A stretch of DNA of 64,000 bases, taken from NCBI RefSeq assembly GCF_001194135.2, contig NC_068999.1:33036931-33100930 (forward strand), given 5' to 3'. Made by a program: the position numbers and the translations under genes. This document shows, one piece after another, positions 36,107 through 60,116 of this stretch (within the stretch, counting starts at the first letter, position 1; each line of letters starts with the position of its first letter). The notes beneath the pieces were generated by a model that had not been told where the DNA came from, ran no database searches, and saw nothing but the letters and a program-made list of their open reading frames with translations. The stretch is from Octopus bimaculoides. Its lineage: Eukaryota.

Positions 36107-38819
36107 GTAAGTTGTGCTGGTGCCATCTTGCCCTTTTTTCACAATACATAATTACTCGACATCATATTTGGAGTATGCTTTTCTTTAATTGACAAACTAA
36201 CACTTGAATGTACGTACATATACATACATATATATATATATATACAGACAGACAGATAAGTGAAGAACTCCATGTGTTCTTCACTAGTCTAAACAATATT
36301 GTTAGCCTGGTGTGCCAACAGAGAGCTTATAAAGTATTTTGCCTGGATTGATAATCCTTCACTGTTAGCTCTGTTGTTATTTATACATACATATGTATAT
36401 TTATATATACACACACACACACACACACACACACACACACACACACACACACACACACACAGGTCATCAACCCTGCTCTAACAACCCTCATGACTCATTA
36501 TATCTAAGGATCATATTAACCTGTGTTTTTTATTAATTAACTGATGGAGTATGTATATATTTAGCTTCTATTTCTAGAAGGTCAAACAACTGTGAAGACC
36601 TAAGTTTTAGTCACTGTTATGATTGTTGGTCAGGATTAGACCAGATATATTGTGCTGATAGTGGCTCACTGTTCAATAAGAAAATGATACCAGTAATTAT
36701 ACTACTACTTGTACTTTGCTGAATTATGAATCACTCATGCAGATATCATTACCTTTTCAATTATGAAAATTTAATGATCTAGATTACTCTGTAGACTCTA
36801 TCTATCCACCAGTCACTTCTGTTTTAGACACAATGTAGACTATATTCAAATGAATTCATCTTCCTACATGATTTAATCTACCATAGCAGATACTGAGGCT
36901 GTCTTGCACTGTGTATGTGTTGTAAATATTGAGATTTACATGCACATGCACACACACACACACACACACACATTAGATGCCAAGATTTTGCAATATTTCA
37001 CTTTTAGTATAGTGGTCAACTGAATCTATCACAACTAACCTCAATGGAGGTTCCAACAGGATCTTTCTACTTTCTAAAAATACCTACCAAATCTCCCTCA
37101 AATCACATCCTACTGTCTTAAAACAAGGAAGGACACATTGGATAATGTAGTCCAAGGTATCTGTCTGAAAAGGCAAGACAGTCACTGCAGGATCACCTTC
37201 AATTAGTGTGAGCTGGGATTAAACAACTACACTTCAAACTGAACCTCAATCTAATTTACCCTATTCCAGGTCTTTCAGTTGACAATGACTGTGAAGGCTA
37301 TAGTCACCATCCCAGCCAATCACTTAACAGATTCATCTTCTGTGGAACCAGTATCTCAAAAGGCTATTCATATTCCATGAGTGAGAATCAAAAATATTTG
37401 AAGTAAAATCCTCAAAAAAAAAAAAAAAAAATGCCCTGATGTCTGCCTTCAGTTGGTCATCTCTATGGTAACACTAACCCTAATGCTGATCCTCACATTA
37501 AGTATAACCCCCCCCCCCCNNNNNNNNNNACCCCCCCCCCCACACACACACACACACACACACCAAAAAAGAAAAAAGGCTCAGGCATGGCTTTGTGGTT
37601 GAGATGCTCACTTTACAACCATATGGTTTCAAGATAAGACCCACTACACAGCACTAAGTGTCCTCTGCTATAGCCATAGGCCTTGTGCATTTGGTAGACA
37701 GATAGTTAATACTTTGGAGATGATTAGTACCATGAGTGAGGACAAGATACACTTTGTGTAGGGATAGAAAGCAATTTTGGTAGAGACAAGTGATACTTTA
37801 TGTAGTGCTCAGTGATTTATTAAGTTTAAAACTGCAAAAGTTTCAGAAATATATTGAAGACTAGAAACACTCATGCATATATACAAATGTACTCAGACAG
37901 ACTGCTCTTTCTTTCTTTCTCTCTCTCTCTCTCTCTCTCTCTCTCTCTCTCTCTCTCTCTCTCTCTCTCCCCCTCTCTCTCTCTCTCACATACACACACA
38001 AACACCCATTAAAGAGGGTTTTCTTGCTACACGTAGAAAGCTTTGTTGAAATGTTTTGCTTGTTACACATTAATAAAATTGTAGGACAATTACTGTTAAA
38101 AACATTTTTTTTTTTTTATAAATGTAAAGTTTGTAAGATTTTCAGAGAAAATAATTTGCAATATTTAGTTTAGTTTTTCTACATTCTAAGTTCAAATCCT
38201 GCCAAAGTAAATTTCACCGTTTAACCTTCTCTGAATGATAAAATATATTCCAATCATTTAACGGACTTTATTCAGTTGATTACATCCTTCCCTCCCTCTT
38301 TCTCTGTCAGTTAGTGTCAGAAATCATTACAGAATCAATAAAGTATCAGTCAATTTAACCCTTTGCCTGTCCTGTGTGTCACTTGTGCTACACACGATAT
38401 ATTTCTCCTGGCAGCCATGCTTATTATATGATTCACATTCCCATTTTTTTCTTTTCTTCTTTCAACACCCTGAGTAATTTGGGACTTTTGAAAGGAAAGC
38501 TTTAGAACATGAAACAAGGGATAACTAAAAGTCTGAAAACAAGTATGGATGTTTAGGACAAACTTATGAAAATGCTTTGGACAGGCAAAGGATCACTCAA
38601 ATTATTCCTTCTTCTAAATACTTGTGGGATTGGTACCTTCTGTAGTATAATTCAGCTACATCTCTGTATGGAAACTATAAACAATGGAACAGAGTCAAAA
38701 GCTTGATACACACACAACAATAGTTGTACTGTAAAACAGTTATTGGTTCATAAACAATGGAAGGAAATAAAAGACAATGTAATGTTGACATAATATATTA
38801 TTCATAATAGAGTTAACTA

Positions 38820-39236
38820 GGCAGGAGTGGCTGTGTGGTAGGTAGCTAGCTTACCAACCACATGGTTCCGGGTTCATCCCCACTGCGCGGCACCTTGGGC
38901 AAGTGTCTTCTACTATAGCCCCGTGCCAACCAAAGCCTTGTGAGTGGATTTGGTAGACGGAAACTGAAAGAAGCCCATCGTATATATGTATATATATATA
39001 TATATATATGTATGTATGTGTGTGTATATGTTTGTGTGTCTGTGTTTGTCTCTCCAACATCGCTTGACAACCGATGGTGGTGTGTTTATGTCCCCGTAAC
39101 TTAGCGGTTCGGCAAAAGAGACCGATAGAATAAGTACTAGGCTTCCAAAAAGAATAAGTCCTGGGGTCGATTTGCTCGACTAAAGGCGGTGCTCCAGCAT
39201 GGCCGCAGTCAAATGACTGAAACAAGTAAAAGAGTA
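38820..39236 (+). mobile_element. Full-length SINE family A (octopus-type tRNA/CORE SINE)
   Basis: Head ggagtggctgtgtggta...gggttcatccc, CORE-like gcaccttgggcaagtg, internal (TA/TG)n and a 3' aaacaagtaaaagagt tail. Confidence 0.9.
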
Positions 39237-40165
39237 GTAAATATTTAAATTTAGGATATACATGAATGTGTGTGTGTGCATGCGTGCATATAATGTGCAG
39301 GTAAGATTGTATGCTTATGAAATCATTGGGTTCAGGTTCCACTACATGGCGCCATGGGCAAGTGTTTTCTGCTATACCTTAGACCAACTAACACTTTGTG
39401 AATGGAATTGATTGTGTGTGTGTGTATGTATAATCATCACCATTTTAACGTCCATTTTTCCATGTTTGCATGGAATAGATGGAGTTTATTGAAACATTTT
39501 ATATGACCAGATGCCCTTTCCTGTCACCAACCTTTACCAGTTTCCAAGCAAGAATAATATTTTCCCGTGGCCAGAATTGTTTTTGCGGAATATTGGAAAT
39601 GAATGCAATTCATTTACAACAATCATGCAATATCAAGACAAGGAGACACAAACATACACACCCATACTTACTAATACAATAGGCTTCTTTCAATTTTCGT
39701 CTATCAAATCCACTCATAAGGCTTTGGTTAACTCAGGGTTATAGTAATAGACACTCACCCGAAGTGCTACACAGTAAGTCTGAACCAAAAACCATTTGGT
39801 TGGAGAACAATTGTGGTGTCACAGATAACTTGATCTTAATAGATTTGATTTCACTCAATAGTTACACCATCAGTAAATGCTGTTATTTTCAAAAGATCTT
39901 TCAAATAAGAATATCTTAATACACTCACACACAGATGTGTGTGTGAATTTGTGTGCATGACATCTTGTGTCTTGTCATTAACACAATACAAACAAAAAAA
40001 ATGGATACCTGTTCTCAATCACCCATACTAGTGGAAAACAGGTTTGCAGCTGAAAGAGCATCTGACCTCAACAAGCTTTGTCTAAGCACTTGTCTGCATG
40101 GAATAATGAACATAGAAATTGAACAAATGAATATATATATATATATATATATAGTTACAGAAACT

Positions 40166-58010: not shown

Positions 58011-58604
58011 TTTCATTTTCTTTGTCATATTAGAATTTGCCTTGTTGATGCTAACACCTGGAAGAGAAATTTGAAACATTCTGTGTAACAGTTTATTTTG
58101 TCTTCCATTTATGGCTGGCTAAATTTTGTTCATAAAAAACTCGGTACATCCTACACATATCTATACCTACTTCTCTCTATATATGTATGTCCCTCTCTCT
58201 TTGTTTCTTTTCTCATTTTGTTTTTTGCCTTTCTGTTTGTTTTTTTTTATCCTTTCTCTTTATATTCAGCTTCATTTTCCATGTCCATGTATAATTTGGT
58301 ATATTTTAATGTATAAAGTAAATAAAGCGATATAGACAATGTATATGTAACTGTTGTGTGTGTGAATGTGATCTATGGATGTAATTTATTATATATATAT
58401 ATATATATATATATATATATATATATAAAGCATGTATNNNNNNNNNNNNNNNNNNNNNNNNNNNNNNNNNNNNNNNNNNNNNNNNNNNNNNNNNNNNNNN
58501 NNNNNNNNNNNNNNNNNNNNNNNNNNNNNNNNNNNNNNNNNNNNNNNNNNNNNNNNNNNNNNNNNNNNNNNNNNNNNNNNNNNNNNNNNNNNNNNNNNNN
58601 NNNN

Positions 58605-58921
58605 TATACACTCCATATCTGACCTCCTAATCAGGTAGTATGTCATGTTGTAAATATCTGAAGCACAAGTTTGACTGAGTGGTTGCAAAGTTTGTTTCAC
58701 AGCAATTTGGTTCCAGGTTTCATCACATTACTCGGCACTTGGACAAGTATCTGTTCTGTGCGTGGGAGAGTGTGTGTGTGTGTAGCTGGGCAAGACTGCA
58801 TATTCCATGTATAAACACAATCCAGTCTAAATGTACTTAAACTATTCTCCTCTTTTTTCAGTTTCCAACCACATTTAATTCGACTCCCCTCCCCTCCTGC
58901 ATGTCATTGTGTACACATGTA
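58605..58921 (+). repeat. 317-bp direct duplication, copy 1 (copy 2 at 61701-62017)
   Basis: The copies are identical apart from one substitution I could see (tatctg vs tacctg). Copy 1 starts exactly at an N gap. Confidence 0.9.
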
Positions 58922-60116
58922 GATGTTTATGCTTCTCTCCTGGTATCCCAGGTCTAACTTGTTGCTCTACTACTCACACTAAAAATTGAAACACCATTAA
59001 CCATATTAACATTTAACTGGCAACATTGTATTCAAAACCCTCTTAATTCAAATTAAGATTTCATCAACTGCCCATATTTTCATGTTGTTGCATGCCATTA
59101 GCATTCTTTCTAAAATTCCTGTGAAATTTCTTTTTGTCATTTTTGCTGCAATAATTTCATTAAATTTTATAATTTCATATTATTTGCTACACAATATTGT
59201 GTGTGTATATAGATATATAGAGATAGATAGATAGATAGTTATTCGTTTTGAAGTGATTTCATTTCATTTTGTTGCAAACATTATATTTATTGAAACTGCT
59301 AGTGAAGGAATTCTTTTAATTTCAGGTTTGCATTACTGCAGCTTCCGAATTATGGCATTCTGTGTGTGTGTGTGTGTGTGTGTGTGTGTGTATACATGTA
59401 TATGTGTGATTGTGATTGTGTGTATGTGTGCACACGGTAATGTTAAGAATGGCTGATGCTGGCTGTTCATTGTTGTGTTGTAGATGACTTTTGCATGTTT
59501 ATTGTTGTTCTTCCCATGTTTCATTTTTTACATTCTGAATTAAGATAGAATATTCTAGAATTGTGGATCTCATCCATTTCTTAACTATTTTCAGCTTCTC
59601 AAAAGCCATGGTGGGCCCATTTGAGGCTAAAGAGACTTTATTCTCACCTAAATGAGTAAATTAGGAAAATAAGGATTAATGAGTCCTTATGCTGATCCTT
59701 AGAATATCCTCTGTGGGAGTTTGCTACACTGTCATCATATGTTTGATAATCTACGTCTAGTTTCTGAAAAAAAAATATCACAGATGATTACATTTAAAAT
59801 GTATCTTAAAATTGATTAGACTGTTTATTGATGAACTAGTAAAGGTTATTGCGTATGGCAGACCCTACAAATGTCAGTTAAATATTTCGTGGTTTATGTG
59901 ACGAGTACTTAGTGGGTTAATAGGGACTATTATGTGAGAACCCACAATTGACTGTCAAATACATCAGGTCAGTTATTATGTGGGACTCTACAACTATCAG
60001 GCATTTGATATTTTAGGGGGTTATTGTAGCAGACTTTACAATTAGCTGTTAAATATTTAATTTCTCTAACTCATATTGTCTCCTTGCTAATTCTTCTTTC
60101 ATCTATCTTTATTTAG

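What the first reader, a model, noticed from the sequence alone, without database searches (positions are those of the whole stretch)
36107..60116. Combinatorial cassette of phase-1 microexons between the I3 and GK exons of dlg1
Seen: the I3 exon ends in phase 1 and the GK exon starts in phase 1. Across the intervening 24 kb lie AG/GT-bounded segments of 3, 21, 21 and 36 nt, all multiples of three and stop-free in phase 1. Full inclusion gives ...SADE-Q-EGDCPGQ-GPPEKKP-GGLASDSREGSL-RGDEPILSYE. Known: the HOOK-GK linker is the alternatively spliced region of DLG/SAP97 and affects SH3-GK interactions and localisation. Inference: an expanded, probably neural, microexon code for a synaptic scaffold in a cephalopod, which gene models would probably miss.
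Basis: partly seen in the sequence, partly recalled or inferred. Interest (0 to 1): 0.7.

Follow-up and report, generated by a model that had tools for sequence, protein, structure and literature searches.

The report
Octopus dlg1 linker microexon cassette
Between two exons of an octopus synaptic-scaffold gene (dlg1) lie tiny in-frame exons, and public RNA data confirm three of the four proposed (3, 21 and 36 bases) in three combinations; this is a real but unsurprising counterpart of the splice variants known for the vertebrate gene.

Summary
The sequence observation holds. I3 (35998-36106) ends in phase 1 and the GK-side exon (60117-60164) starts in phase 1. The stated criterion is not selective: 1278 segments in the interval satisfy it. 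RNA evidence is what counts.

Assembled RNA contigs were examined from 16 runs (six organism labels plus one metatranscriptome).
- In 15 runs I3 is followed by AAG, which is absent from the genome at that donor. The 16th contig stops 3 nt after I3. This is a 3-nt exon, and it looks constitutive.
- C is present in 13 runs, A in 5 (always with C) and B in none.
- Three forms were seen: 3, 3+C and 3+A+C.

The 3-nt exon is most likely at 40850-40852. That site has the best splice signals and sits in a conserved island. B has no RNA support, but it lies in a 203-nt island that is 95% identical in the most distant species, and it shares an upstream UGCAUG with A.

Both assembly gaps are intronic, and mRNA joins exons across them in frame. 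"Neural" and "missed by gene models" could not be tested, and "expanded" is not shown. This is a new member of a known kind.

The parts
35690..35753 (+). Upstream HOOK exon (VERKERARLKIVKFTGKGNDK), spliced to I3.
   Evidence: The joint 35751/35753 to 35996/35998, GT..AG, is present in 4 RNA runs. It matches 'EKKERARLKTVKF' of the DLG1 structure 3UAT.
35998..36106 (+). I3-like exon, 109 nt, enters in phase 0 and leaves in phase 1 (...SADE + C). Donor is C|gtaagt.
   Evidence: Covered exactly by RNA contigs in 16 runs. The exon/intron boundary words are held by 11 independent DNA runs of the same species. It aligns with the vertebrate KRSFKFSKKLPFFKK region.
37520..37529 (.). Assembly gap (10 N between poly-C runs), intronic.
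   Evidence: It lies between I3 and the next exon. mRNA joins the exons on both sides in frame.
40850..40852 (+). Most likely position of the 3-nt exon AAG. It completes the codon C|AA = Gln and passes G to the next exon.
   Evidence: AAG follows I3 in 15 of 16 runs, and the X15 contig ends 3 nt after I3. Only three agAAGgt sites lie between I3 and exon A. This one has the best donor (AAG|gtacgt, 5.5 bits), no AG for at least 60 nt upstream and a long pyrimidine tract. 40825-40879 is invariant in organisms B, D and A. The most distant organism, G, aligns only at 40724-40932. The position is inferred; RNA cannot place 3 nt.
42533..42553 (+). Exon A, 21 nt, alternative cassette. Adds EGDCPGQ. 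Weak donor AAG|gtttttac; UGCAUGCAG at the acceptor.
   Evidence: Present as AAG-AAGGCGATTGCCCTGGCCAAG-GTGGAT in X5, X7, X8, X11 and X19, and absent in 10 other runs.
46742..46762 (+). Exon B, 21 nt, predicted only. Would add GPPEKKP.
   Evidence: No RNA support in 16 runs. Its acceptor and donor (CAG|gtaacc, 4.2 bits) are good, and it is one of 4 of 986 segments that pass a crude splice filter. An organism G contig aligns to 46675-46877 with 9 mismatches and 1 gap, and there are no substitutions in 46707-46796. UGCAUG lies at -14, as in exon A. There is no Rfam hit and no stable fold.
53717..53752 (+). Exon C, 36 nt, alternative cassette, usually included. Adds GGLASDSREGSL. Ends with C, so the next codon is C|GT = Arg.
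   Evidence: Covered by RNA contigs and joined upstream to AAG or A and downstream to the GK exon in X1, X3, X7 and X12. Its first bases follow AAG or A in 9 further runs. It is skipped in X4 and X9. It aligns with the TSNASDSE insert of other animals.
58438..58604 (.). Assembly gap (167 N), intronic.
   Evidence: It lies between C and the GK exon, and contigs run from C straight into the GK exon.
60117..60164 (+). GK-side exon, enters in phase 1. It encodes GDEPILSYEAVIQQE, the strand that follows the variable HOOK segment.
   Evidence: The loose ends behind C and behind AAG read GGTGATGAACCTATCTTATCATA.... It aligns with VLSYEPVNQQEV of 3UAT, 3TVT and 1KJW.

Best explanation
The 24-kb interval between the I3-like exon and the first GK-side exon of an octopus DLG1-type MAGUK gene carries a row of very small exons that all enter and leave in phase 1, so any subset keeps the frame.

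Shown:
- A 3-nt exon, AAG, is included in every transcript seen.
- A 21-nt exon, A (EGDCPGQ), and a 36-nt exon, C (GGLASDSREGSL), are cassette exons.
- Three linker versions result: ...SADE-Q-GGDEPILSYE, ...Q-GGLASDSREGSL-RGDEP... and ...Q-EGDCPGQ-GGLASDSREGSL-RGDEP...

Inferred:
- The 3-nt exon sits at 40850-40852.
- It is probably spliced stepwise, one flanking intron before the other. A 3-nt exon leaves too little room for the factors that bind the acceptor and the donor to sit on it together, so it cannot be defined as an ordinary exon.
- Exon B (GPPEKKP) is a real but rare or cell-type-restricted exon, co-regulated with A through the UGCAUG/UGC element that both carry just upstream of the acceptor.
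- The inserts change the length and charge of the disordered HOOK segment between the basic protein 4.1/calmodulin-binding I3 region and the strand that closes the SH3-GK unit. This would tune intramolecular SH3-GK coupling and partner binding, as described for vertebrate SAP97 inserts.
For: - Gene identity: the best PDB matches are DLG1 (3UAT), fly Dlg1 (3TVT) and PSD-95. Database relatives carry PF00625 and are named disks large 1.
- The AAG exon follows GATGAAC in 15 of 16 runs, ahead of three different acceptors: A, C and GK.
- The genome reads GATGAAC|GTAAGT at that donor, and 11 DNA runs hold the words that span the boundary.
- A is present in 5 runs from four organism labels, and C in 13 runs (same calls).
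- Within the window's own species, four runs of one study show three different forms.
- Position of AAG.
- Exon B: splice signals, 95% identity over 203 nt in the most distant species, and a UGCAUG shared with A at a chance of about 0.03 per site.
- All 16 combinations are in frame.
- The insertion site corresponds to the segment missing from the crystallised DLG1 SH3-GK chain.
- Vertebrate HOOK inserts and their effects: PMC9307800, PMC4505885, PMC2133382.
Against: - Logan contigs give only the dominant path of each run, so minor isoforms, including skipping of AAG or inclusion of B, would be invisible.
- B has no transcript support at all.
- The position of the 3-nt exon is inferred. The G bases at the site itself were not listed, the site at 36578-36580 is not excluded by conservation in close species, and a gap lies in the same intron.
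- Runs were chosen because they hold I3, so transcripts without I3 were not sampled.
- Tissue identities are coded, so regulation is only a difference between runs.
- No functional test of the protein variants was possible.
Confidence: 0.8

Rival explanations
1. Only A and C (plus AAG) are exons. The B segment is a conserved intronic element, such as a splicing regulatory region, a decoy pseudo-exon or a transcriptional enhancer, that happens to be AG/GT-bounded and open in phase 1.
For: B appears in 0 of 16 runs. The conserved island (203 nt) is much larger than the 21-nt segment. Open AG/GT segments are abundant by chance.
Against: B is one of only 4 of 986 segments with both a good acceptor and a good donor. 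Both splice sites and all 21 nt are unchanged in organism G. It shares UGCAUG near the acceptor with the confirmed exon A. Wide flanking conservation is typical of microexons (general knowledge; Irimia et al. 2014). There is no structured-RNA signal.
Confidence: 0.4
2. The extra AAG is not a separate exon. It would come from an assembly error or polymorphism at the I3 donor, or from alternative donor or acceptor use.
For: AAG is always present and never skipped, which is what a simple extension of I3 would look like. Exon A itself begins with AAG, so a GC donor after its third base could give I3-AAG-C.
Against: The genome reads GATGAAC|GTAAGT, and words spanning this boundary are held by 11 DNA runs from four studies. 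AAG precedes three different acceptors whose upstream bases are CAG, CAG and TAG. In five runs AAG is followed by the complete exon A (AAG AAGGCG...), which needs a second AAG upstream of A. A well-formed agAAGgtacgt site exists in a conserved island.
Confidence: 0.04
3. The 3-nt exon is real but lies elsewhere: at 36578-36580, at 41326-41328, or in sequence missing at the 37520-37529 gap.
For: RNA cannot place 3 nt. Close relatives hold about 30% of the words around 36578, much as around 40850. The G bases at 40848-40854 were not listed.
Against: The 36578 site has a poor donor (gtcaaa, -1.5 bits) and an AG 13 nt upstream. The 41326 site has G at -3 and an AG 2 nt upstream, and it lies in a high-copy repeat with depth 3000-5000 against 14. 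Organism G holds no words at 36520-36640, but it aligns around 40850.
Confidence: 0.15
4. Null: the four segments are chance AG/GT-bounded open segments in a long intron, and I3 is spliced straight to the GK exon.
For: 1278 such segments exist in the interval.
Against: RNA contigs from 16 runs contain AAG, A and C at exactly the predicted boundaries. None shows I3 joined directly to GK.
Confidence: 0.01

Closest known systems
Alternatively spliced HOOK inserts of vertebrate DLG1/SAP97 (i3, i2, i5, i4)
   Same: Same gene family and the same place, between the SH3 and GK domains. Both have a basic I3 exon (RKFPF motif) followed by short in-frame cassette exons; mouse i2 is 36 bp. Different combinations occur in different cell types (PMC4505885, PMC9307800, PMC2133382). 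Octopus exon C (36 nt...ASDS...) aligns with the TSNASDSE insert that follows I3 in other animals.
   Different: Octopus has a 3-nt exon and 21-nt exons with no evident sequence counterpart among the relatives retrieved. No alternative to I3 was looked for. The octopus I3 exon is 109 nt, not a multiple of three, so it cannot be skipped on its own. Orthology of C with i5 rests on a short motif and on my recollection of which human peptide is i5.
Animal microexons (3-27 nt), many of them neural and dependent on Srrm3/Srrm4 (eMIC domain)
   Same: The lengths are 3 and 21 nt, both multiples of three. The flanking intron sequence is conserved. UGC motifs lie close upstream of the acceptor. The gene is a synaptic scaffold, and the inserts fall in a disordered linker next to an interaction surface.
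   Different: Neural enrichment was not testable here. The 3-nt exon appears constitutive. Dependence on Srrm is pure inference.
Known 3-nt microexons (RPS24; cytohesin-1 diglycine/triglycine)
   Same: A 3-nt exon that adds or changes one residue (PMC11703226; PMC6314551).
   Different: Those are alternatively included and switch function or cell type. The octopus AAG was present in every run examined.
Recursive splice sites / RS-exons in long introns
   Same: A strong acceptor almost abutting a strong donor (tatag|AAG|gtacgt) in the middle of a long intron, which implies stepwise intron removal.
   Different: Classical ratchet points leave nothing in the mRNA, whereas here 3 nt remain. Stepwise removal was not observed.

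Membership tests
DLG1-type MAGUK HOOK-region cassette exons | The host gene is a DLG-subfamily MAGUK with an SH3-HOOK-GK arrangement. | tested here: met
   PDB best hits are DLG1 3UAT (6.6e-22), fly Dlg1 3TVT and PSD-95 1KJW. Both sides of the insert site align: ERKERARLKxVKF and LSYExV...[10 protein letters not shown]. Relatives carry PF00625.
DLG1-type MAGUK HOOK-region cassette exons | The exons lie between the I3-like basic exon and the strand preceding GK, and they keep the frame. | tested here: met
   All 16 combinations are in frame and stop-free.
DLG1-type MAGUK HOOK-region cassette exons | The exons are included in some transcripts and skipped in others. | tested here: met
   Met for A (5 runs with, 10 without) and C (13 with, 2 without). 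Not met for AAG, which is always included, or for B, which was never seen.
DLG1-type MAGUK HOOK-region cassette exons | Orthology of individual exons with vertebrate i2, i5 or i4. | tested here: inconclusive
   C aligns with TSNASDSE through a shared ASDS core and has the same 36-nt order of size. A and B have no counterpart in the retrieved relatives. Exon structures of other species were not available.
Neural (Srrm3/4-type) microexons | Length 3-27 nt and a multiple of three. | tested here: met
   The exons are 3, 21 and 21 nt. C, at 36 nt, is outside the usual cut-off.
Neural (Srrm3/4-type) microexons | UGC-containing motif between the pyrimidine tract and the acceptor. | tested here: met
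   UGC lies at -18 (AAG exon), at -9 and -5 (A) and at -14 and -10 (B). There is none within 40 nt of C or I3.
Neural (Srrm3/4-type) microexons | Strongly conserved flanking intron sequence. | tested here: met
   For the AAG site, organism G aligns only at 40724-40932. For B, G is 95% identical over 203 nt. A was not tested, because that call was lost to a filter.
Neural (Srrm3/4-type) microexons | Higher inclusion in neural tissue, and dependence on Srrm3/4. | not testable with these tools
   Run tissues are coded, only dominant contigs were available, and there are no perturbation data.
Recursive splice site | Juxtaposed acceptor and donor in a long intron, with stepwise-splicing intermediates. 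| tested here: inconclusive
   The signals are present at 40820-40858. No intermediates could be looked for, because no raw RNA reads were available.

The most novel reading that the evidence does not exclude
The always-included 3-nt exon is an obligatory waypoint for stepwise removal of the 24-kb I3-GK interval. It regenerates a strong donor from which the downstream choice among A, B, C and GK is made. B would be a genuine exon used only in a narrow neuronal or developmental population. Together these would give octopods a lineage-specific, UGCAUG/UGC-controlled linker code in their main DLG scaffold.
Probability: 0.2. Interest if true: 0.6.

Novelty: new member of a known kind. Interest (0 to 1): 0.42.

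Why it matters
DLG/SAP97 is a core scaffold of synapses and cell junctions, and in vertebrates its HOOK inserts decide localisation, calmodulin and protein 4.1 binding and SH3-GK coupling. This result shows that octopods vary the same linker, but with their own tiny exons.

Practical points:
- It gives exact coordinates and junction sequences that can be counted in brain versus other tissues.
- It flags a 3-nt exon that standard aligners and gene predictors tend to lose. If the AAG were missed, models would carry Arg (C|GT) where the mRNA encodes Gln-Gly.
- It offers a compact natural test case for how a 3-nt exon is recognised.

It does not overturn anything known.

Tried and rejected
I reconstructed the exon chains from loose ends and contig coordinates instead.
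- A 4.6-kb DNA lay over A and B was lost to a filter at 43840-43878 but still counted. Conservation of exon A's flanks therefore remained untested.
- The protein database search with the full-inclusion peptide returned no cephalopod protein, only fragments from other animals. It says nothing about the annotation status of these exons.
- A metagenome scan for the B-to-C/GK junction found nothing. The control pattern was too short and gave only chance bacterial hits, none carrying the longer octopus sequence. This gives no inference about B.
- Conservation around the rival AAG site at 36578, measured as share of words, was not discriminating among close species.
- A structured RNA was considered as the explanation for the B island. 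There was no Rfam hit in 35000-61000, and the fold z-score was +0.67.
- The McLaughlin 2002 paper that defines I4 and I5 is not held. The i5 peptide assignment therefore rests on my memory.

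
Full report
**1. What is in the sequence**

The I3-like exon is 35998-36106 (ag|GTGGCA...GATGAAC|gtaagt). It reads VAAANEKRKSNFSFSRKFPFMKSKDHSGSEDVSADE and leaves one base, C. The GK-side exon, 60117-60164, needs one base to read (R)GDEPILSYEAVIQQE.

That places them as follows:
- A at 42533-42553;
- B at 46742-46762;
- C at 53717-53752.

All three are AG/GT-bounded.

The stated criterion is not selective. The interval holds 1278 AG/GT-bounded, phase-1-open segments of at most 129 nt, 84 of them 3 nt long. 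The sequence pattern alone proves nothing.

**2. Gene identity**

The flanks of the variable segment match solved DLG structures. ERKERARLKIVKF (exon 35690-35753) and [45 protein letters not shown] align with DLG1 3UAT, fly Dlg1 3TVT and PSD-95 1KJW. Database relatives carry the guanylate-kinase domain and the name disks large 1. The inserts fall in the HOOK segment that is absent from the crystallised DLG1 chain.

**3. RNA evidence**

Nineteen of the 24 runs returned for the I3 exon hold all of its sampled words, under six organism labels plus one invertebrate metatranscriptome. I examined 16 of them. DNA runs that hold the window's intron words completely all belong to organism B, so the window is from organism B.

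I therefore laid contigs on I3 and on C and read the loose ends and contig coordinates.

| Form seen after I3 | Runs |
|---|---|
| AAG-C (the onward join to the GK exon was read only in X1, X3 and X12) | X1, X2 (organism A); X3, X6 (B); X10 (D); X12, X13, X14 (F) |
| AAG-A-C | X5 (B); X7, X8 (C); X11 (E); X19 (F) |
| AAG-GK | X4 (B); X9 (metatranscriptome) |
| contig stops 3 nt after I3 | X15 |

The X15 stop is what an assembly graph does at a branch point. In X1, X3, X7 and X12 the same contig runs from C directly into the GK exon.

The totals are:
- AAG in 15 of 15 informative runs;
- C in 13;
- A in 5, always with C;
- B in 0.

Four runs of one study of the window's own species show three different forms, so the choice is regulated or at least variable. 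Logan contigs keep only the dominant path, so minor forms are invisible.

**4. The 3-nt exon**

AAG is not in the genome after GATGAAC. The genome reads GATGAAC|GTAAGT, and 11 DNA runs from four studies hold the words that span this boundary.

AAG precedes three different acceptors, so it is not an acceptor variant. In five runs it is followed by the complete exon A, so it is not exon A's own first three bases.

Only three agAAGgt sites lie between I3 and A:
- **40850-40852.** It has the best donor (AAG|gtacgt), no AG for at least 60 nt upstream and a long pyrimidine tract. 40825-40879 is invariant in organisms B, D and A. The most distant organism, G, aligns only at 40724-40932 and nowhere in the next 230 nt.
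- **41326-41328.** It lies in a high-copy repeat and has a poor acceptor.
- **36578-36580.** It has a poor donor and an AG 13 nt upstream. Word sharing there did not discriminate among close species.

I place the exon at 40850-40852 with about 0.8 confidence. This is inference, because three letters cannot be mapped by RNA.

**5. Exon B**

B has no transcript support. Three lines of indirect evidence still favour it:
- In a crude, independent splice filter, B and the 40850 AAG site are two of only four segments out of 986 with both a good acceptor and a good donor.
- In organism G, whose introns otherwise fail to align at 80%, a contig matches 46675-46877 with 9 mismatches and one 1-nt gap. 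It has no substitution in 46707-46796, which covers the acceptor, all 21 nt and the donor.
- B shares with the confirmed exon A a UGCAUG within 15 nt of the acceptor. The hexamer occurs only 21 times in 24 kb, a chance of about 0.03 per site.

The island has no Rfam match and no unusual fold. I rate B as an exon at about 0.55-0.6. The rival reading is a conserved intronic regulatory element.

**6. The assembly gaps**

Both gaps, 37520-37529 and 58438-58604, lie in introns. The mRNA joins the exons on either side in the expected order and frame, with no unexplained letters. DNA continuity across the gaps was not tested.

**7. How it probably works**

Shown: three linker versions that differ by 0, 12 or 19 residues, placed between the basic I3 segment and the strand EPILSYE. 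The AAG exon turns the junction codon into Gln and passes on a G, so the next codon is Gly or Glu.

Inferred from what is known of SAP97/hDlg (PMC9307800, PMC4505885, PMC2133382): the inserts alter the length and charge of a disordered tether next to the protein 4.1/calmodulin-binding I3 region. That would alter SH3-GK coupling and partner choice.

Inferred from general splicing knowledge:
- A 3-nt exon cannot be defined as an ordinary exon, so it must be spliced stepwise, like a recursive site.
- UGC/UGCAUG just upstream of A, B and the AAG exon suggests control by Srrm-type and/or Rbfox-type factors.

**8. Comparison with what is known**

Mammalian Dlg1 has HOOK cassette exons i3, i2 (36 bp), i5 and i4, used in cell-type-specific combinations (PMC4505885, PMC9307800). 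Octopus C aligns with the TSNASDSE insert of other animals through an ASDS core, so it is probably the ancient i5-like exon.

Three-nt microexons are known, for example in RPS24 (PMC11703226) and cytohesin-1 (PMC6314551). Octopus bimaculoides is already included in exon-level splicing comparisons across species (bioRxiv 10.64898/2026.09.05.749416). I found no paper on dlg in that context.

This is therefore a new member of a known kind. "Expanded" is not shown, and "neural" and "missed by gene models" could not be tested.

**9. Side observation on constraint**

C (36 nt) and A (21 nt) are identical in all organism labels. The first 30 nt of the GK exon carry one to three synonymous changes; for organism F the contrast gives Fisher p = 0.03. 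This fits extra constraint on the RNA sequence of the small exons. I3 identity is biased by how the runs were chosen.

**Verdict**

The finding is real but fits established knowledge.

Noticed in passing
window 54203-54232 (+): A 30-nt AG/GT-bounded, phase-1-open segment (would add about LLKRRIPSSR) with a poly-T acceptor and the strongest donor score in the interval. It lies between exon C and the GK exon and is one of four segments passing my crude splice filter. It is not in the dominant contigs of X1, X3, X7 or X12, where C joins GK directly.
   Followed up: partly
window 55161-55163 (+): A 3-nt GTG segment with a good acceptor and an acceptable donor also passes the same filter. There is no RNA evidence for it.
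   Followed up: no
window 41270-41450: A high-copy repeat, probably a transposable element. Contig depth is 600-5000 against 4-33 for neighbouring single-copy DNA in four octopod DNA runs, with many diverged copies. Shorter repeated stretches lie at 40629-40686 and 40890-40947.
   Followed up: partly
window 42524-42529 and 46728-46733: UGCAUG, the Rbfox-type hexamer that also contains the UGC of Srrm-type microexons, lies 9 and 14 nt upstream of the acceptors of exons A and B. The hexamer occurs only 21 times in the 24-kb interval.
   Followed up: partly
window 53717-53752, 42533-42553 versus 60117-60148: The small exons C and A show no nucleotide difference among organism labels. The start of the GK exon carries 1-3 synonymous third-position changes: TAT>TAC, GGT>GGG and TTA>TTG.
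   Followed up: partly
window 60164/60425: The GK-side exon ends with a single T, and the next exon starts at 60425 with TG. The junction codon is therefore TTG = Leu (QQELKYTRP, as in other animals), not the Val obtained by reading the genomic frame through the acceptor.
   Followed up: yes
window 46640-46880: The two '?'-kind runs of organisms D and A (X39, X43), which covered 40600-41450 well, laid no contig at all on the exon B region. The reason is unknown; it could be low coverage or a local difference.
   Followed up: no
window 60240-60326: A long (CT)n microsatellite interrupted by a 10-N gap lies in the intron right after the GK-side exon. Further microsatellites, (CA)n and (TA)n, lie at 36211-36260, 36395-36460 and 59362-59392.
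   Followed up: no
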